A stretch of 64,000 nucleotides of DNA from Camelus dromedarius (Eukaryota). The DNA lies in NCBI RefSeq assembly GCF_036321535.1, contig NC_087454.1, forward strand, positions 20,150,001-20,214,000, in the 5' to 3' direction. The position numbers and the translations under genes are program-made. Shown piece after piece: positions 192 through 58,576 of the stretch; positions within the stretch are counted from its first letter, which is position 1, and the number at the start of each line of letters is the position of its first letter. Under the pieces are notes generated by a model. It was given only the letters and a program-made list of their open reading frames with translations. It ran no database searches and was not told the origin of the DNA.

Positions 192-3100
192 CTAGAGGTG
201 CCAGGGCATCTGGAAATTCTGGGCTGGGAGTGGGGTGCAGTGTGTGGCCTCGAAGTTGTGCAGATGCTTCTGAGCCTGAGGGGAGAGGGTGGGACAGGTG
301 GGGTGCAGAGCACGGACACCCTCCAAACCCACTGCCCACTCTACAAAAGATGTCGCTTCCAATGCTTATGGGGTACCCTGTTCCCAAGCCCCACATGTGC
401 CCCCTGGCCATTCAGGCACCCCCTTCCTGCTTCCCACCCTGGAGCTCACCAGAAACAAAGCCAGCTGCCGCCGTCCATCCACACTCATGTCCTCCCCTGC
501 AGAGAGGACACGCTCAAACTTGGGCCATGCACCTGGGTGTTCATCCCCAGCCCCCTCTCCTGCCCCGGGACTCCTTACCTACACTCCAGGGGAATTCAGG
601 CCCGTGTTCGGCCTGGTAGGAGCGGAGAACGGACAGGCACCAGTCCTCCTCCACCTCCCATCGGCTGTAAATCGAGGCTGGTTATGGAGAGAGAGGAGTG
701 CCCATCAGCAACCTGGCCCTGCTAGGCCCCCAACAAAGGCCTCAGTGGGTCCCCTCTCACCTTCCTCCAGCTGTGAGGAGGCCTCCAGCCACTGCCTCAC
801 CACTTGAAGACCCTCCTCTGCCATCACACGGGGATACCTACAGAGGGAGCGCCAAGGCAGGAGGTCGGGACCCAGTTCTCTGCACTCCTTATCCCTGACC
901 CTTCTCCCCGCCCTCCTTGCGCTGGTGACGGCACACACATACACCCTGGCTCTCACCGATGCTGCAGGAGCTTCAGCAGGAGGTCATTGCCTCGGTTAGA
1001 CATGATATCCTCAGGAACCCTGGAGGGTGAGAAGAATGTACACTGGAGGGGCTGGAGGCTGGGGAGGGAGGGTCTGGACACCTGGGTTTCTGGAGGGCAG
1101 AGGGAGGAGGGACAACTTCCTAGCTGTCTCTGGGATCCAGGAGGGCAGAGGTTCCCAGGCACTCACGTGGTGGTGATGATCTCATCCTTGGTTCTGCGGA
1201 TCAGCAGCACAGGGCCCTGGTACCTTCAGAGGACAGTGTAGTAGGGAGGGAGAGTTCAGAGGGAGACAGGTGACACTGCCACCCCACCCCTACACTGGCT
1301 GCATTCTTACCCCCTGCTACAGTAGGGCCCCTTCACCCAGGCAAGCCCTTCACCCAGGGCTGAGAGTCTGAACACTTAAGAGTGGGCATTGCTCAAAGGC
1401 AGGCCTTGCTGGGAGATCCCTGCTATGCCAGGTATGAACTGTTTGGTTACCAGATCATGGGAGGGTCCAGGATCCCAGGGAAGCTGGGAGGGGTTGGGTC
1501 TGCTGGGGTGATGGCAGGGTCACTCAGGGGATGTGGGTCAGTGGCCTTTTGCCAGCTTGCACTTTACTACTAATTTCAGCATTTGAATACGCAGCACCAT
1601 GTCTATGGTGGGGTGAGGCGGGGGAAAGGTGTTATATGCCGGACACTGGCCTGCCCTCACCTGCACAGCTGCTCCGCGTTGTTTAGATTGAGATGCTGCC
1701 TCACGGTCCTGGTCACCAGGCCCCCTAGAGTGAGATAAAAGTGAAGCGACAGCAGAGACAAAGCCCCTGCCCAACACAAAGGTCCCTACTGTTCATGGAG
1801 ATAGAAAACTGAGGTCCCCAGACAGGGGAGTCCTCCTGCTTCTCAACAGGGTGACCTACTCCCCACCCACAGAAAGGGGAACCATCTCCAATTAGAACAG
1901 CTCCCAGTTCCAGCCCACCCCTTCCCTGCACTCACTCCAGCTGTCTGGCATGACCTTCAAGGCCAAGGGCACCAGGTCATCAAAGGAGGCATCCAGGATC
2001 ACGGCACTAATGTCTGGATAAGACATGGCTGCCCACGTAGCTGGTACCAGGACAGGGAAGAAGGGTGATGATCAAGGGGCTTCTGCCCACCACCCCCACC
2101 CTCATCCCACTGATCCTGTAGGCGGACCCCATCCTCCCTACTAAGTTAGTCCCAGGTCTCTCCTTAACCCCTCACTTCAGTCAGCCAGGGCTCTGCCTGG
2201 AGAGGATGGAGAGAGAACAAAGTGCACTGAAGACAATACACACAGGAAACATTCACTTCCCTGACCTCCCCATCCCAGGACCCAGGTCTACTTCTTTTAA
2301 TAACTGGGCACAAGGGTGGAAGGAAATATGAAGTGTATATGAATAGGATACCTTCCTCCAGACCCACTCAGAGATCCCAGTTCCATTCCTTTCTTTAAGC
2401 CTCCACCCCACTCCTGGGCCACCAGTGCGTTTCCCCACCTCTCCTGGGTTGTGGGGTAGCATGGAGATGGCATGAATGTGCCTGCGCTGTGGGGGTAGGA
2501 GAGAGGCCGTTACCGGTGAAGCCGCCAATGGACCAGGCATAGAGGATGATGTCCTGGGGATGGAAGCCCAGGCGGTGGATGGCAAACTGGACCACCACAT
2601 CCACGGCATTGGCCTCATTCTGCGGGAACGGCACCCCCTGCAGGAAGAAGGGCAAAGGGTGCTGAGTGGGTCAGCACCAAAGGCTGGTTTGCCTGCCACC
2701 CCCACCCTTCCAGCATGGACCCTTCCTGCAGCTACCCTGCAACAGAGAAGATGGAACTGCAGCTCTGAACAGACATTTCAGAGTGCTACAGTCTTATTTC
2801 ATGGAAGAATAAATCTGTAGTCTTATTTCATGGAAGAATAAATTTCTGTCAGTGGCATTTAAAAAGAAGAAAAGAGTGGGGGAGAGTACAGCTCAGTGGT
2901 ATAGTGTGTGCTTAGCACGCATGAGGTCCTGGGTTCAATCCCTCATACCTCCCTTAAAAATAAATAAATAAACATAATTACCTCCCCCTCCAAATAAAAA
3001 TAAATGTAATGATAAAAAAAAAAATCAGTAAAAAGAGGGGGAAAATACCCTAAAAAAAAAGAAAAGAATAGGGTGGTGGAAGGGGCTCTTCTCTCTAGAA

Positions 3101-6100
3101 ACCAGTCATTTACAGCAAGGTCCTCCCTCCCCTGCTCCTGCCAATCCCTCAGTGTGAGAGAAGGGGGCTTGCAGCCCCTTGCTCTTGGCACCCAGGTCAC
3201 AGTGAGTGGGAGACCCCATAGAAATATACATGACTTTCCCTGACTCCAGGAGCTGACCAGAGGGAGACAGACCATCATTCAGGAAGAGGAAGGGATTCTA
3301 GAGAAGGTCTCACCGTGCTTCCAGCAAAGCCTGGATGATTCCAGCCCAGGACTGAATATCCAGCTGTAACACAGGGTATGGAAGGGCTGGAACTTTACTG
3401 CCCACGTCCACCCCCTGCCCCAGCTCTGGAAGAAGGAGCCACAGGACAATGGAGCCCTAAACAGCCCCCAACTCAGGCAAATAACTCCAAGCGTTCCCAG
3501 AATGGAGACATGACACCAAAGGTTCTGAGGCAGCAGAAGGGAGAGATACGTGATTGTTGGGGGCGGAACAGAACAAGGAGCATAATGAGGTTAGGGACAC
3601 AGCCCAAGGGGAGGGATGTAAGTTTAGCAAAGCAAATCGGGAATGCACTTTGCCCCAAAGGCAAGGGTCTAAAACCTCTCCCAGAGAAAGTGGTTAGGCC
3701 CTGGGAAGCTGGGGACATTCCATTCCAAGGGGCAGAGATAAGAGGCCTGAGGCATGGGCCTACCTTCCAGAGGTGTGGAGACGCAGCCCACCTCATAGAA
3801 GCCCGCGTTCCCCTCACAGCAGATCACCTACAGGGGGAGCAGGAAGGAGCCAAGTTGGAACCAAACATCCCCCTAGTGGCAGGGAGGGCAGCCTGTGGGA
3901 GCTTCCTAGGGAAGAGGAAAGCTCACGTTTCTTGTTCTCTCCAAGGGGAATGGAAACATCTCATTTCACAGGGTCCATGAAGTGAGAAGAAAAGTGCTTA
4001 GCAAGCTGAGCCCTCAGAGAAAGAAGAATGATCTGAGTTGAGATGCTCAACCCCTCCAGCACAGTGTCGTTTTTCCTTGGAAGACCACCACCTGGATAGC
4101 TCTCAGGATGGGATTATGGATGTTTTTTCCCTTTCTGGTTTCTGGGCCCATTTTTTCTGTGACTGTTCTTTCATGTGGTATGCCAAGTGCTTTCCCTTTC
4201 CCTCCTGGGCTCCAGACTTGTGGCTAGATATACTCTACTGGTGCCCGAAGCCAGAGCCCAGATATGGTGGGACTTACGTAGACCCTCACAGCAGCTGGGC
4301 AGAGCCAGGACTAAAGCCCAGCTCCCTGTACTGCTGGCTCAGTGCTCGTTCCAGGGCTGTGGCATGGATGCAGGAGACTTCGGAGCAAGGCTGCCTGGGT
4401 TCAAATCCCAGCTCTCCCACTCACTAACTGTGTGATCTGGGGAAGTTATTCTGTGCCTCAGTTTCATCTGTAAAATGGGCTAATATAAACGGTACCTACC
4501 TTACAGGGCTGCTGTGAGATCAAACATATGCCCTGCATGTGTACGTGCTGTCTCAGCAGCAACTGTTACGATGATGACTTTTTTGATCCTTGCGTGTCAG
4601 CTCCTACTTCTTCATCTATTTCCCTATCACAGGGATTTCCTGCACCAAGAGGTCTTTAGGGTGTAGCTGGGAGATGGGGTTATCCCCACTGTGCTTCCTT
4701 AGGGGCTGTAGAACTGAGATCCCCAGAACCCCCACTGCCCTCCCCACATTCTGCCTTTGCACTCCCTGCTCCCTCTCACCAGCTTCTGTCCCTGGGGCTC
4801 AGCTGTCCCCCGTCGGTCCACAAACATGGTGTCAATCTCGTTGCCGTCACAGGCCAGTAACTTTGCCCGGCGCCCGTTACACTGAGTGTGCGAGATGCAA
4901 CAGCCAGGTTGGACGGGCAGGAGGCCACATCCCAGGTCAGGGAAGAAAGGCTGTGGAGGGGAAAGGGAAGGGGAGCCTTACCTCTTCTACCAGCCGGGCC
5001 TGGCCCTGCAGCAGCACAGGCATGAGGGCCTTCTGGAGCAGATACACTGAGCCAGGATACAGCATCCGGCGCCCCAGCGTGTGTGCCACCAGGTAGCTGT
5101 GGGGAACATGGGTCTAATGAACCCCCAACCCCAGTGGGGCCCTGGCACCATCCCAGCCCTAGCACTCACAGACTCTGGGGCCTGCCTCACCCTTGACCTT
5201 CACAGGTTCATTTTTCCCCTTTCAGGACTTAATGAAACAATAATATATGTACCAACTTTTCAAACTTTTTCACGGCAACTTTTCAAAGATACTTTATATC
5301 ATGGCCTGGTACATGCATATGCACATATAATACTGAAAGTTTTATGAGATAACACTTTCTATATACGATAAGTAAAAGCAAGGTAATTAACAATTATGAT
5401 TCTGATAATATATAAATACAATTTATTAGAAGTCCCAAAATAGGCAATACTGATCACTGCGACATTCCCAATGTCTGCCATGTGGTAAGTGCTAAAAGCC
5501 TGGCACAGAGTAGGGGCTTAATAAATATTTCTTGAACAAATGTACTAATCTAGACACAAAAGATGTGGCAGGTGCTGTTCCTGAAAAAGACAGTTAAGCA
5601 GTTCCAGTTAATCCTGAAGTAGGATTTGTCCCCAGAACAACACTGTACAACCCCTTCCAACAGCCCCCTCAAAACCTCACACTTGGCTTGCCCCTCTGGT
5701 CAATCAGCACATGGTCAACAACCGACCACTAAGTCCACCCCTTCCTTGGTAGCCCACAACCCACCCCCCAGGCCCCAGCGACAGAATTCCCACAGTGCTG
5801 CTCCACTGTAAGATCCGGGTGGTCACTGGTGTTACTTCAGATGTCATCAGTGCCCACAACTACACTTTACTTGGGCCTCACCTCGTGCTCCCAGGCACCC
5901 AGGCAAGGTGGAAGCACTTCTGAATATGTTACCTACTTAATCTCACCAACCCTGTGAGCAAGTTGTTCACGGAGACAGAAAATGTAGCTCCTTCGAGGAG
6001 GAATGACCAAGGAGCAGAGGGGCCAGGGTAGGGCCGCAGCTGCCACCAGACCCTGCTGCGCTAAGGCTATGGGTTCCCTCCCCACCTGCAACCTCATTCT

Positions 6101-13012: not shown

Positions 13013-13152
13013 NNNNNNNNNNNNNNNNNNNNNNNNNNNNNNNNNNNNNNNNNNNNNNNNNNNNNNNNNNNNNNNNNNNNNNNNNNNNNNNNNNNNNNNN
13101 NNNNNNNNNNNNNNNNNNNNNNNNNNNNNNNNNNNNNNNNNNNNNNNNNNNN
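13013..13152. other. Assembly gap (140 N) covering the ABHD16A start codon and 5'UTR
   Basis: Run of N. The visible part of exon 1 (RAPSGVPGTPTSVTTPPSSSW) runs into it. Confidence 0.95.
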
Positions 13153-25214: not shown

Positions 25215-27397
25215 TCAGTGCAACAGCCAGAGGCCAAGGCCAGCCAAGGAGGTAACAAGGACAAGGGCCAGGGCCGGGGTGGGCCGAGGGGCTGGGCTAT
25301 TGCAGTTGTCCTTGTTGCAGCAGGTAGTGTTATAGGTCAGGCCCAGCTTGTGGCTGGTTTGGTTGAAGGCCTCCCGACAGGGCTCTTCTGGTGTGCCGCA
25401 GCGGAGATTGGAGAAAACCCACATCTTACCTGGGGTTAGAAGTGGCCAGTGGAGTCAGTTAAGGTGGGCACCTGACATGCCTGTGTCCACTTTCCCACCC
25501 CTGCACCCCACCCAGGCTTCCTTCCTTCCCAACTCTGCCCCTGGCCGTGCCCTTCTGAATCTCTTCTCAGTCTAACCTCCTGCACTTCCTTACTTTGCCC
25601 CATCACCCCAATCCTGGTCCTATCACTTGCTGGCCATGAAGTCTTGGACCAGTTACTGTCTCTTTCTGAGGCTGTTTCCTCAGTAGAACAATAGCAGCAC
25701 ATCTTAGGGTTGTTGTGACCATAAATTGAAACAATCCATGTAAAGACACGGAATGGTGCCTGGCGCACAAAAGTCCTTGGCCAATTACCATCATTGCTGT
25801 AATTCTCTGTTCCACCTCAGCCCCAGGCATAGTCTCCCACTGGACCCCTCTCCCTACTAGAGAAGGGATGTTACCGAGATACACATTTGTTGTCAGGCAT
25901 TGGTGTCCTGGTTCCAGGCGGCAGGACTGCCGGTCCACGCAGCCCAGCACAGGGACCTTGTAGCAGGAGTGACAGCGAATGTCAGCTGGGAAGACAGAAG
26001 TCATGCTGAGGTGATGGAGTGTCTGACTCACCTCGGGATGAGCCGAGCTGGGAGATAGGGTGGAGAAGAGCCAATCAAGTAGGTGTTCTGACCTGTTTGG
26101 TCTGCTAGGGACGGAGCAGGTGAGTGATGCAGAAGTGGAAGTGGGTGAGGGTGGAGTTGTTGCTCTGTGAATAGCCTGCACCCTAACATCTTTCTTCACT
26201 CCACCCCACCTGGAGATGAGTCAGGAGGAGCAGAGTTACCAAGAAAAACATGGGGCTGGGGAGGGACGGAATGTGAGCCTACCACAGGGAAGGAATGAAG
26301 GAGGTGAGGGAGAAGATGAAGGAATGCAGAAAACATCACAGATGGAGTCTTGAAACAGGAAGAAATATTAAAAGTAAAAACCATGGCGTTACAACACTTG
26401 TAGAAATGGCTTGGAACTTGAGGTGGGCAAGAAAGCCACCGGGGGCCAGCTTTAATAATTTAACCTTCAACCCAGGGGTGGCCAAGAGTGTGGGAAGAAG
26501 AACCAGACCTGAATGGAACCCTCCCAACACAGCAGCTCTCTGACAGAAAGGAATAATATCTGGGAGACAGATCATCGGAATCCATCTGAGCACTTTACCG
26601 AAATGGAAGGATGAGGGCAGAAGATGACACCCCTTAAAGTTTCTGCCTCAGCTGATTTAAGGTTTGAGTGAAGAAAGGGTTCAATCTATGGGTGGAGGAT
26701 CCTGGGACTGCAACTCAGGAAAACCTACCTCATCTGGGGGTGAGCAGCCCCGGTATTCCCTCCCCAGAAGGCTGGGAAATCTCCCTGGTTCTCTGGGAGG
26801 TTCTGAGGGGCCACTGGAACCCTCCAGAAAGCTTGTGTCCTTGGGGGTATGCACCCCAGGGAGGAGCAGAGCGTATCAGGAAAAGCCACTGCTTGACGGA
26901 CTGAGCACAAAGTCCCTGATGGAGTAGAAGGGAGGATGGAGAGCAAAAGAAGTCCCTGACTGCATGTCTAGATTTCTGAGAGAACACCCTGCTGAGTGCA
27001 GGTGGTGAGAGAAGGAAGCAGGTAAGCTGCATCCTAGAGAGTTTCATTATTGGAATGGGGCTGGCAGGGGAACTGGAGAGCAGAGTTTCCAAGAAGGAGT
27101 GGGGAACAGGGGAACTGGAACCCTGGGCAGGTTAAAAGAGTGGGTCTTGGTGGGGAGGAGTCTGAAGGATGGAGACTGGAGTCCTTGAGAAATGGAGCAA
27201 GGACTCCGTCACAGGGTCAACTGAGCCAGTTGGGTCTGGGGGCACTGGGGATCTTGAGTTGTGGGTAGTGTAGGGCAGTGGCTGGGACAGGGTGTGGAAG
27301 TCCTGACCAGGTGAACCAGGTCTTTGGGGGCCCCCAGGTGCTCACCTGAGACCCAGCAGAGCAGAGCAGACAGGATGAGCAGCAGAAAGCCTTTCAT
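25215..27397 (-). CDS. LY6G6C: LY6/uPAR GPI-anchored protein G6c, 125 aa
   Basis: Exons 27397-27346, 25985-25875, 25429-25215 (378 nt). Sequence ADIRCHSCYKVPVLGCVDRQSCRLEPG...TTCCNKDNCN, 10 Cys. AATAAA (-) at 24771-24776. Confidence 0.97.
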
Positions 27398-28734
27398 GGT
27401 GAGTGTCTTGAGAGTGGTAGCGGTAGCAGCAGCCGACAGAGTAGAATTTCCGGGTTGGGTTCTGGGAGTTGAGTGGCCTTTTTGGAATTTATAATTCCAA
27501 CGGTCCCTCCCTTCCCTGACTCTGGTGGCCCCTCCCTCCCCATTTAGGGAGGGGCTAAGCAGGGCCCAGTGAGGGAGTGGGGATGGGGATGGGAGAGAGA
27601 GGTGGGGAGGGTAGGTGCACTAGTGGCCAACTCCATTTTGGTTCTTGGTTTCAGTCCAAGACACACCCTCCTGGCCCCCAAGAGTAATATCCCCTCCTGC
27701 CCAGTCCTCTGAAGAGGTATCACCAAAGGCCCCTGTGATGTTACAGTGGCTGTGGTGGTAGCATCTGCTGGTTCCTGAGAAATGAACAATGGGGTATGGC
27801 CCAAGCTGAGTGCCAAATTTAATCCCCGGTGGGCATTTGTAGGGGCACGTGGGCAGAAATTGAGCACCAAATTAACCTCATTTCAGCCCCTACTTGGTCT
27901 TCCCAACCCCTGCTCAGCCACAGGATGAAGGGTTTGTGATGTCACCAAGGGCTTCTGTGATGTCATAGCAGCAGAGGCATGGGATGGAGCTGCCTGCTAA
28001 GGAAGGGTTGCTTCAGGCCCCCTGAAGGTTCTGAGGTCCTGGCTCTGGCTCTGCTTGGGCTTGGCCTGGACTTGGTTGCTCCAGTCTGGTAAGGGCTGAT
28101 GAAGTCCTGGGTGTGGGGCTTTGCACCTGCTCCAAAGCACTTCCTCAATCAAAACCTGCCAATTTGGGCGCAGCACCAATGGCTGGGAGGGACAGCGTGG
28201 GCACAGAGAGGTGAGGTAGCAGCTAAAATAAGAACAGAAATGGTAATAATGGCAAGTACATAGTGCTCCTATGTCTCAGCCATTGTTCTAGGCATTTTCG
28301 GTGTATTACTTAATTCTCACAATACTCTACAAGGTAGGTGTTTTTATCCCCATTTTACAGATAATGTCAACAAGCCCAGAGAAATTACACGACTTGTGCA
28401 CATCATGCATCTAGTACATGGCAAAGTCAAGATTTCAACTCAGACAGTGGGGATCTAGAAATCGTGGTGTATTAGGCACCTGCGACGCTGCAGTGGTTGA
28501 AGTCTGCGGTAGTGTTGGTGAAAACGGCCCCAGCAGGAATTTTAAGTGAGCATTGGTTGAGGGCTGTGACTTTGCCTGGGAAGATTCCCAGAGGGATCAG
28601 GGCAGCTGGTGGCCCCGCCCTCACCCCTTATCGGAGCCCCCAGACCTGCGGTCTCCCTCTCCACCCCCACCTCCGGTTTCCCTCCGGTGTCCTCCGCTGA
28701 TTCATTCGCCGCCTCTTACCATCACATTCCAGCT

Positions 28735-30426
28735 ATGGCCCTGGTTCTGCAGCTGCTACCGCTGCTGCTGTCGAGGGCCCACGGGAGCCCCGGGGGTAAG
28801 CCATCCCGGGAAAGTCAGAATGGCGACGAAGGACTGAGGCAGGGGGCGGGGATAAATAGGAGGAGTGGGATGTGTGTGGGAAGATCCAGGACGGCTGGAG
28901 AGCAGAGGAGACGAGAGGAGAGCAGACGTAAGTGAGGGGTCGTCTCGCCCTGTGGACTTTTCCTAACCACTACCTCTGGCCTCCCCTAGCTTCCCTGGTC
29001 GGCCGCCCTGGGGACAGGGTGAATCTCTCCTGTGAAGGGGTATCGCAACCCAGCCGCTGGGTCTGGGCACCTAGCTTCCCCGCCTGCAAGGGTCTGTCCA
29101 AAGGACGTCGCCCGATCCTGTGGGCCTCACCGAGCGGGACCCCCACCGCGTCTCCCGTTCAGCCCTTTGCTAGTCGCCTACGTGCTCTGGACCTTGATAT
29201 CAGGCGGCTGGAGCTGCTCCTGAGCACGGGGGACTCGGGCACCTTTATCTGCAAGGGCCAGCACCAGGGAGAGAGTCGAACGGTGCTTCACGTGCTGGGG
29301 GATCTGGCCAATTGCAGAGCTCCGGAGCCTACCCAAGGTAGGTCTAGGACTTCATATACAAGAGACTTAACCCTGACACACGCCCCCGGCAGGGAGGGAG
29401 GCCGTGGCTGGGGGTTCCTGAGTAGGAGACCTAGCTGTCCTCGCACCTTTGACCTTGGCATCCACCGCCACCCCGCCTCCAACATTCCCTTCGGGTCAGT
29501 TTATCCCCAGATCCTGATCCCGCTGCTAAGCGTTGGGTTGGTGCTGGGACTCGGAGCGCTGGGCTTGGTCTGGTGGCTGCGCAGGTGAGCACGAGGGGCG
29601 GGATTTCACCGGAGGCGGGAGGGGCAGGACCACAACTTTTGCAGACAAAAGCTAGATCTGGAGCCCTGGGGTCTGGTTTGGAGAAGAATGGAGGAGGTCA
29701 GAACTTGGCGAAGCCACGAGCTGGTGGGTGGAGCCCTGGCTAGGGAAGCGAAGCTAGAGGCGGAGCAGGCTCAGAGCGTGGGCGGAACTATCTGTGGGGG
29801 TGGGGCTTAAATTGTTTTGTGGGTCAGAGCCTGCACCGAGTTGGTGGGTTGTTGGTGAGTCCTGGGACCCAGAACTAGCGAGAGAAGACTGGTGGCTCTC
29901 AAATACTTTTATCCATCCTTACAGGCGCTCGCCCCCTCACCCGCCCTCGCCCCCTCACCCGCCTCGACCGCTGCCCAGATTTGGTGAGACTAACTCCACC
30001 CCATTTTCCTTCTCCGCACATTCCCCACCCAATGCCGGAGTCTTAGCCCTTGCTGGGAGCAGACAAGTTGGTTACCTTCTCTCAATTCTTCAGCTCTGTC
30101 CCCCCCACATAGTTCCACTCGTGAAAGCCGAGCCCCAGAGGCCAGTAGAGGAGGAGGAGCCAAAGATTTCAGGGGGCCTGGATCAAGAGTCGGTAAGGGC
30201 TTGGGGATGGAAAGGGGGCTGGTCAGAATCCCTGGGTAAAGTGGATCAAGAAAGACAGAGGCCTGGATCCCCAAGGGAGTCAGACTTCTGAGACCCTCCT
30301 GCCTTCCTCCCCACCTTTCAGAGCCTGCTGTACGCAGACCTGGATCATATGGCCCTCAGAAGGCCCTGCCGACTGTCCCCAGTGGCCCCAGCTGATGCCT
30401 CCACCATCTATGCGGTTGTAGTTTGA
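28735..30426 (+). CDS. MPIG6B: G6b-B megakaryocyte/platelet inhibitory receptor; non-canonical exon 3 acceptor; predicted 245 aa
   Basis: Exons 28735-28795, 28990-29337, 29500-29584 (ancestral start 29494 is preceded by CG), 29925-29983, 30113-30192, 30322-30426. IgV with an NLS sequon, TM, ITIM LLYADL and ITSM TIYAVV. Confidence 0.92.
29928..29963 (+). repeat. Perfect 18-bp coding tandem duplication (SPPHPP x2)
   Basis: CTCGCCCCCTCACCCGCC at 29928-29945 and 29946-29963 in MPIG6B exon 4. Confidence 0.95.
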
Positions 30427-30779
30427 AAGGAACCCCTTACTCCAAACCTCACAAGCTGGGGGCTCCCAGGTCTCCATAACCCTCCCCTTCTTGGCCCTTC
30501 ACGTGGGAAAGGAAGGCACTGTGAGATAGAAATGAGCACTAGACTGGGAGTCAGAAGAGCTGGGCTCCAGGCTATCCCTGTCACTGATCTTCTTCCTTCC
30601 TTCCCCACAACTTTCATGTCTCCTTCACCACTGATTTCCTTTCTAGAGCTGATCAAGCCCTGCTTCCCCATGTTGAGATATCTACAACTCCTAGATTACT
30701 GCCCTCTCTCTTTCCCTCTCTCCGCAGTCAAGCTCTTTCCACCAATGGCCTACACCTAGCTCTTCCATTTTCTTCAGTC

Positions 30780-44664: not shown

Positions 44665-58576
<13,912 letters not shown>

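What the first reader, a model, noticed from the sequence alone, without database searches (positions are those of the whole stretch)
29461..29510. G6b-B transmembrane exon has lost its ancestral AG acceptor, with two in-frame rescue routes
Seen: exon 2 ends CAA G| (phase 1), so the orthologous exon (GSVYPQ...) must begin at GG 29494, but it is preceded by ...ccctTCG, not AG. The first AG after the pyrimidine tract is GTCAG at 29498-29499, and there is no other AG from 29461. Splicing there gives G+TT TAT CCC CAG = ...EPTQ-VYPQILIP, in frame and lacking only Gly-Ser. Independently, the 156-nt intron 29338-29493 is a multiple of 3 and stop-free, so retention gives a full receptor with a 52-aa longer stalk. 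Established: G6b-B signals through its ITIM/ITSM and SHP1/2, and its loss causes macrothrombocytopenia and myelofibrosis in human and mouse, while TM-exon skipping gives soluble forms. Inference: this is either lineage-specific splice-site turnover that may shift the membrane/soluble isoform balance, or a base-call error.
Basis: partly seen in the sequence, partly recalled or inferred. Interest (0 to 1): 0.75.

Follow-up and report, generated by a model that had tools for sequence, protein, structure and literature searches.

The report
Camel G6b acceptor site moved 6 bases
In camels the splice acceptor in front of the membrane-anchor exon of the platelet receptor gene MPIG6B (G6b) has been destroyed and replaced by a new one six bases downstream, which most likely just removes two amino acids from the receptor's stalk: a real but ordinary case of splice-site migration.

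Summary
Window 29490-29499 reads ttcgggtcag. The position where every other mammal examined has CAG| reads TCG, and the only AG between 29434 and 29508 is at 29498-99.

The same letters occur in five Camelus assemblies and four independent run contigs.

Eight outgroups have the ancestral CAG: pig, sheep, minke whale, otter, bat, monkey, pika and a published human primer. None has the downstream AG. So camels both lost the old acceptor (A>C at 29492) and gained a new one (C>A at 29498, silent in the old Ser codon).

Splicing to 29500 is in frame and gives a 245-aa G6b-B lacking Gly-Ser, with the TM, ITIM and ITSM intact. The public gene call in three Camelus assemblies spans exactly 28735-30426 with a 245-aa product. 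Alpaca RefSeq isoform X3 carries the junction EPTQ|VYPQ.

The in-frame, stop-free intron 2 is shared with pig, whale and sheep and shows no codon-position bias, so it is probably incidental.

Actual usage and any shift in isoform balance therefore remain inferred. This is a known kind of event and of low-to-moderate interest.

The parts
28735..28795 (+). MPIG6B exon 1 (start codon, signal peptide; ends in phase 1)
   Evidence: Translation. The public gene call in L013-L015 starts at exactly this base.
28990..29337 (+). Exon 2: G6b-B V-set Ig-like ectodomain, ending CAA G| in phase 1, followed by a consensus donor gtaggt
   Evidence: Pfam PF15096 G6B, E = 3.4e-62. 100% identical to the Camelus bactrianus G6b protein P0001.
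29338..29499 (+). Intron 2 as now spliced (162 nt = ancestral 156 nt plus 6 nt of former exon)
   Evidence: GT at 29338-39. The first AG after 29434 is 29498-99. The 156-nt ancestral intron is in frame and stop-free.
29449..29453 (+). Candidate branch site TTGAC (A at 29452), 47 nt before the new AG
   Evidence: TGACC is invariant in all seven aligned species. Distances were computed. The branch-point role is inferred, not shown.
29492..29493 (+). Dead ancestral acceptor: CG where all outgroups have AG
   Evidence: Alignments A1 and A2 and the pig locus show CAG| in whale, sheep, otter, bat, monkey, pika and pig.
29498..29499 (+). New, camel-derived acceptor AG (tCAG|TTT), created by C>A in the former Ser codon (TCC>TCA)
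   Evidence: Outgroups read GTCCG, GTCGG, GTCGT or GTCTG here. The human primer in PMC6742478 reads GGG TCC GTG. Alpaca isoform X3 has the junction EPTQ|VYPQ.
29500..29584 (+). Exon 3 (85 nt instead of 91): juxtamembrane VYPQ plus the transmembrane helix ILIPLLSVGLVLGLGALGLVWWL
   Evidence: Translations. The 245-aa product of the public gene call fits only an 85-nt exon 3.
29925..29983 (+). Exon 4 (proline-rich cytoplasmic segment; contains a perfect 18-nt tandem duplication at 29928-29963)
30113..30192 (+). Exon 5 (cytoplasmic)
   Evidence: The e2>e5 isoform P0001 joins here.
30322..30426 (+). Exon 6: ITIM LLYADL, ITSM TIYAVV, stop codon
   Evidence: The public gene call ends at exactly 30426.

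Best explanation
This is the camel orthologue of MPIG6B (G6b). In the camelid lineage the 3' splice site of intron 2 migrated 6 nt downstream. The ancestral CAG| became TCG (A>C at 29492, with two neighbouring C>T changes). A silent C>A change in the first full codon of the old exon (Ser TCC>TCA, 29498) created a new CAG|. No AG lies between the conserved branch-site region and 29498-99, so the spliceosome's second step should take that AG. This is the established 'first AG downstream of the branch point' rule. The phase-1 G of exon 2 then joins TT to make Val. The mRNA stays in frame and encodes a 245-aa membrane receptor identical in architecture to G6b-B, but lacking Gly-Ser about five residues outside the membrane. 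Shown: the DNA state, its fixation across Camelus, its derived nature, the frame arithmetic, and the match to public gene models. Inferred: that 29500 is the acceptor mainly used in vivo, and that the two-residue deletion is functionally neutral.
For: The DNA is real: identical TTCGGGTCAG occurs in nine independent camel sequences, and full word share is held by DNA runs labelled as four organisms. The state is derived: seven outgroup loci have CAG| and lack the downstream AG, and the human primer agrees. The frame holds: exon 3 from 29500 gives a 245-aa protein with TM, ITIM and ITSM. Public models agree: the G6b gene call in three Camelus assemblies spans exactly window 28735-30426 with a 245-aa product (mapping). 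The ancestral form would give 247 aa and retention 299 aa. Alpaca RefSeq isoform X3 (P0003) reads EPTQ|VYPQILIPLL. Among the 120 best G6b proteins, every other TM-containing form keeps the two residues. The AG-free zone runs 29434-29497 and the new site has a CAG context. The stalk tolerates length change: sheep lack 12 nt at the end of exon 2. The TM exon is identical at protein level in camel and alpaca, and camel is no more diverged from the consensus than whale.
Against: The 245-aa camel product was recognised only by its length and exact gene range, not by its sequence, and it did not appear in the protein search. The camel proteins whose sequences I could read are TM-less (P0001, e2>e5, 197 aa; P0122, 156 aa) or unspliced (P0002). 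The new AG is separated from the pyrimidine tract by cGGGtc. A well-set CCCCAG lies 11 nt further on at 29509-10 and could compete; it would frameshift. Gene models can be built from homology and need not reflect transcripts.
Confidence: 0.8

Rival explanations
1. The migrated acceptor is weak, so camel pre-mRNA mostly skips the TM exon (e2>e5 in frame, 197 aa; or e2>e4, frameshifted). Camels would then make mainly TM-less G6b and little membrane G6b-B.
For: The only Camelus G6b proteins returned with sequences are TM-less (P0001 197 aa, P0122 156 aa). A purine-rich cGGGtc lies between the pyrimidine tract and the AG.
Against: The 197-aa e2>e5 form is annotated in many mammals that have an intact acceptor (seals, bears, cats, primates), so it is not camel-specific. 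Three Camelus assemblies carry a 245-aa product. Exons 3 and 4 remain open, the TM is conserved between camel and alpaca, and the ITIM and ITSM are intact. Loss of G6b-B causes severe disease in human and mouse (PMC6742478).
Confidence: 0.1
2. Intron 2 is retained as coding sequence and supplies the membrane receptor, with a stalk 52 aa longer (299 aa).
For: The intron is 156 nt, in frame and stop-free. Whale RefSeq isoforms with the retained intron exist (P0010). Pig, whale and sheep introns are also multiples of 3 and open.
Against: Differences between camel and whale or sheep are spread evenly over codon positions (9/7/8 and 12/8/10). Compensating frameshifting indels change the peptide between species, so there is no sign of coding constraint. 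The open frame is not camel-specific and therefore did not arise as a rescue. The only camel sequences with the intron retained are co-linear with the genome over the stretch each covers (L005 across all the introns) and over intergenic DNA, so they look like genomic DNA.
Confidence: 0.04
3. Splicing goes to the next AG (CCCCAG| at 29509-10), giving a frameshifted product without TM or ITIM. In this case G6b-B would be functionally lost in camels.
For: That AG has a good pyrimidine context (TTTATCCCCAG) and lies only 11 nt downstream.
Against: It is not the first AG after the branch region. The upstream site has the favoured CAG context. The product would be 231 aa and frameshifted, which matches neither the 245-aa camel gene call nor the alpaca X3 junction. 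The same CCCCAG exists 17 nt inside the exon in most mammals without being the annotated acceptor.
Confidence: 0.03
4. A base-call or assembly error at 29492 hides a normal AG.
For: None found.
Against: Nine independent camel sequences from at least three species labels carry the same letters. Three of them differ from the window at nearby sites, so they are not copies of the same assembly. Twenty runs hold the stretch.
Confidence: 0.01

Closest known systems
Tandem (3n-spaced) alternative acceptors / 'wobble splicing' (NAGNAG and delta-6 sites) and their evolutionary turnover (PMC2668829, PMC2279118, PMC2018619)
   Same: Two acceptor AGs lie a multiple of 3 apart. The change removes two residues in frame from an unstructured segment. 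The new site arises from a synonymous change in the old coding frame, as described for species-specific wobble sites (abstract of PMC2668829).
   Different: Here only one AG is left. It is a completed migration, not a present-day alternative pair. No sampled species carries both AGs, so the intermediate state was not observed.
AG scanning/competition model of 3' splice-site choice (Smith, Chu and Nadal-Ginard 1993, as listed in the references of PMC2018619)
   Same: There is an AG-free stretch of 64 nt from the branch region to 29498-99. The first AG, in CAG context, is the predicted acceptor.
   Different: This was not tested for this intron. The branch point is only inferred from a conserved TGAC.
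Human/mouse MPIG6B (G6b-B), ITIM/ITSM inhibitory receptor of megakaryocytes and platelets (PMC6742478)
   Same: It shares the PF15096 Ig domain, a single TM, ITIM LLYADL, ITSM TIYAVV, the six-exon structure, and a position next to LY6G6C.
   Different: Camel lacks the Gly-Ser of ...THGSVYPQ... just outside the membrane, and has an extra SPPHPP in the cytoplasmic proline-rich segment.

Membership tests
MPIG6B (G6b) orthologue | G6b-B extracellular V-set Ig-like domain (Pfam PF15096) | tested here: met
   Exon 2 translation scores 208 bits, E = 3.4e-62, against a cut-off of 24.3.
MPIG6B (G6b) orthologue | Single hydrophobic TM segment after a short stalk, then a cytoplasmic ITIM (LxYxxL) and ITSM (TxYxxV) | tested here: met
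   ILIPLLSVGLVLGLGALGLVWWL, LLYADL and TIYAVV are all present in the 245-aa translation. This was judged by inspection; no TM predictor was run.
MPIG6B (G6b) orthologue | Position in the MHC class III LY6 cluster next to LY6G6C | tested here: met
   LY6G6C exons lie at 25218-27397 on the minus strand. The same neighbour is present in camel, pig and pika loci. The downstream neighbour was not identified.
Migrated (tandem-type) 3' splice site | Ancestral AG present in outgroups and absent in the focal lineage | tested here: met
   CAG| in seven outgroup loci versus TCG in all camel copies.
Migrated (tandem-type) 3' splice site | Replacement AG at a distance that is a multiple of 3, keeping the frame, with no AG in between | tested here: met
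   The shift is +6 nt, the protein is 245 aa and in frame, and the AG list shows none in between.
Migrated (tandem-type) 3' splice site | The new junction is the one present in mature mRNA | not testable with these tools
Only indirect support exists: the alpaca X3 junction and the 245-aa camel gene call.
Migrated (tandem-type) 3' splice site | An intermediate with both AGs exists or existed | tested here: inconclusive
   None of the seven outgroup loci, nor the human primer, has the downstream AG. No alpaca or llama DNA could be fetched.

The most novel reading that the evidence does not exclude
The migrated acceptor is measurably weaker than the ancestral one, because of the GGG spacer before the AG and the competing CCCCAG 11 nt downstream. 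Camelids would then make less membrane G6b-B and more TM-less or frameshifted transcripts than other mammals. That would be a natural hypomorph of a receptor whose loss causes macrothrombocytopenia and myelofibrosis, tolerated or compensated in this lineage.
Probability: 0.1. Interest if true: 0.45.

Novelty: new member of a known kind. Interest (0 to 1): 0.25.

Why it matters
It is a clean, datable natural example of how an acceptor site can move without breaking a disease-relevant gene. One substitution makes a spare AG at an in-frame distance and another kills the old one. It also explains why camelid G6b models look odd in databases (245 aa, or only TM-less forms), and tells annotators that the Gly-Ser gap is real. 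The intact TM and ITIM/ITSM make a large physiological effect unlikely. Unless RNA data show a changed isoform balance, this is a footnote to splice-site evolution rather than a discovery about platelet biology.

Tried and rejected
- After no DNA of 28742-28781 was sent to a search tool. Scripts on the closed machine aligned fetched loci to the whole window.
- **Alpaca locus.** P0003 is not on record in the look-up of encoding contigs. Alpaca LY6G6C was not among the listed cluster members. No alpaca or llama DNA was obtained.
- **Spliced camel transcript fragments.** A search of the protein collection with P0003:60-151 returned none.
- **Alpaca X3 alternative first exon (MAPLGILT).** Not found in the window upstream of exon 2.
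- **Literature.** No paper mentions camel MPIG6B splicing.
- **Exact look-up of the 245-aa spliced protein.** Not done, because a spliced sequence has no reference and would have to be typed.
- **Splice-site strength.** No MaxEnt-type score was computed because no model tables were available. Only pyrimidine counts and context are given.
- **Readings rejected.** Base-call error; an upstream AG at 29433-34 (frameshift and stop); coding constraint on intron 2.

Full report
**Identity of the gene.** The + strand of 28735-30426 carries a six-exon gene:

| Exon | Window coordinates |
|---|---|
| 1 | 28735-28795 |
| 2 | 28990-29337 |
| 3 | 29500-29584 |
| 4 | 29925-29983 |
| 5 | 30113-30192 |
| 6 | 30322-30426 |

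Exon 2 matches Pfam PF15096 (G6b-B V-set Ig-like domain) at E = 3.4e-62. It is 100% identical to Camelus bactrianus G6b (P0001) and 99% identical to alpaca G6b isoform X3 (P0003). LY6G6C lies just upstream on the minus strand. The window is 100% identical over 14 kb to assembly GCA_036321535.1, and 99.87-99.98% identical to three other Camelus assemblies.

**The observation.** Exon 2 ends CCCAAG|gtaggt at 29337 in phase 1. Positions 29490-29499 read ttcgggtcag. AGs within 29400-29520 start only at 29421, 29424, 29427, 29433, 29498 and 29509. Starting exon 3 at 29500 gives a 738-nt CDS and a 245-aa protein...EPTQVYPQILIPLLSVGLVLGLGALGLVWWLRRR..., with ITIM LLYADL and ITSM TIYAVV. The ancestral start at 29494 would give 247 aa. 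Retention of the 156-nt intron gives 299 aa without a stop.

**Not an error.** The string CAACATTCCCTTCGGGTCAGTTTATCC occurs in the following:
- C. ferus GCA_000311805.2 (L011);
- four chromosome-level Camelus assemblies (L012-L015);
- four Logan run contigs (L004-L007).

Three of the run contigs differ from the window at 2-7 nearby sites, and L011-L013 and L015 also differ elsewhere, so they are independent. Twenty runs hold the stretch; DNA runs labelled as four organisms, among the 10 studies these holders belong to, hold all 187 sampled words of 28700-30450.

**Ancestral state.** I fetched orthologous loci for minke whale, otter, sheep, a colobine monkey, a bat and a pika through their G6b proteins, and for pig through LY6G6C. 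All seven read CAG| at the ancestral acceptor. All seven lack the downstream AG; they read GTCCG, GTCGG, GTCGT or GTCTG where camel has GTCAG. A human cloning primer in PMC6742478 reads CAT GGG TCC GTG TAT CCC CAG, which is the same state.

So the camel lineage made two relevant changes. The first is A>C at 29492, which kills the old AG. The second is C>A at 29498, silent in the old Ser codon, which makes a new CAG. Three further substitutions (29490, 29491, 29501) fall in the same 12 nt.

If the old AG had been lost first, the next AG would have been 29509-10, which frameshifts. A tandem-acceptor intermediate (gain first, then loss) is therefore the more plausible order. This is inference: no species with both AGs was seen.

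The indirect evidence is as follows.
- Alpaca RefSeq isoform X3 has the junction EPTQ|VYPQ.
- The public gene call for G6b in three Camelus assemblies spans locus 2972-4663, which maps to exactly window 30426-28735. Its longest product is 245 residues, the length given only by an 85-nt exon 3.
- Among the 120 best G6b proteins, every TM-containing form other than alpaca X3 keeps the two residues.
- A conserved TGAC branch-site candidate (A at 29452) is followed by an AG-free zone up to 29498-99, and the site is a CAG. This fits the scanning rule cited in PMC2018619.
- The TM exon is identical at protein level in camel and alpaca, and exons 3 and 4 remain open.

One caveat applies. I saw the 245-aa camel product only as a length and a range, and it did not come up in the protein search.

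**Consequence for the protein.** Gly-Ser sits about five residues outside the membrane in the stalk (...THGSVYPQ|LLIPLL...). The human ectodomain constructs span residues 18-142 (PMC6742478). The stalk varies naturally. Sheep lack 12 nt at the end of exon 2, and bats, a lemur and the pika have other residues at the Gly-Ser position. A neutral or nearly neutral two-residue deletion is the most likely outcome.

**The second 'rescue route'.** Intron 2 is a multiple of 3 and stop-free in all four cetartiodactyls sampled: camel (156 nt), pig (159), minke whale (159) and sheep (171). In the other four species:

| Species | Intron 2 |
|---|---|
| Otter | 152 nt, not a multiple of 3 |
| Bat | 148 nt, not a multiple of 3 |
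| Monkey | 165 nt, a multiple of 3 but contains a stop |
| Pika | 120 nt, a multiple of 3 but contains a stop |

. Whale RefSeq lists retained-intron isoforms (P0010). However, camel-whale and camel-sheep differences are even across codon positions (9/7/8 and 12/8/10), and compensating frameshift indels alter the peptide. The open frame therefore looks like a GC-rich accident inherited from the cetartiodactyl ancestor, not a camel rescue. The camel contigs that retain intron 2 are co-linear with the genome over the stretch each covers (L005 across all the introns) and across intergenic DNA, so they look like genomic DNA.

**TM-less forms.** P0001 (197 aa, e2>e5) and P0122 (156 aa) are the only Camelus G6b proteins whose sequences were returned. 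The 197-aa form is annotated in many mammals with a normal acceptor. It is therefore not evidence of camel-specific exon skipping. A quantitative shift in the isoform ratio remains possible and untested.

**Comparison and novelty.** Mechanistically this is a completed 6-nt migration of an acceptor through what was probably a tandem-acceptor stage. That is a known kind of event (PMC2668829, PMC2279118, PMC2018619). No paper mentions it for camel MPIG6B, but public gene models already embody it. I rate it as a new member of a known kind, of low-to-moderate interest. Its main value is as a tidy example and as an annotation note.

**Earlier scan notes.** The one earlier scan note returned concerns another place and had no bearing on this report.

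Noticed in passing
window 29928-29963: Perfect 18-nt tandem duplication (CTCGCCCCCTCACCCGCC x2) inside exon 4. It adds SPPHPP to the cytoplasmic proline-rich segment (RRRSPPHPPSPPHPPRPLPRF, against RRRSPPHPPRPLPRF in otter). It is present in all seven camel copies that cover it.
   Followed up: partly
window 29338-29493; L001, L003, L016: Intron 2 is in frame and stop-free in all four cetartiodactyls sampled (156, 159, 159 and 171 nt) but not in otter, bat, monkey or pika. Differences show no codon-position bias, so the open frame is probably incidental. Whale RefSeq nevertheless lists retained-intron isoforms.
   Followed up: partly
window 29490-29501: Five camel-specific substitutions fall within 12 nt around the old acceptor (29490, 29491, 29492, 29498, 29501). 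This is denser than the roughly 17% camel-whale divergence of the locus and could reflect a multi-nucleotide event.
   Followed up: no
L005:1934 = window 29927; window 29537: A second camel haplotype or species (Logan contigs L005-L007) has G>C at 29927 (Arg>Pro in the RRR stop-transfer motif; seen in L005 only) and a synonymous G>A at 29537 in the TM exon.
   Followed up: no
L012:2972-11261: In assembly GCA_000803125.3 the G6b gene call spans 8.3 kb across LY6G6C with a 252-aa product. In the other three assemblies it spans 1.7 kb with a 245-aa product. This looks like a chimeric model.
   Followed up: no
L003 (sheep), alignment A2 columns 17-28: Sheep lack 12 nt at the 3' end of exon 2 (stalk 4 aa shorter...KALG|SSYSH...). 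This shows natural tolerance of stalk-length change in G6b.
   Followed up: no
protein search: The 245-aa Camelus G6b product recorded in the gene-position index was not returned by the protein search, although it should share every word with the query. The searchable camel set therefore looks TM-less only because of database content.
   Followed up: no
window 13013-13152 and 56200-56347: Two runs of N (140 and 148 nt).
   Followed up: no
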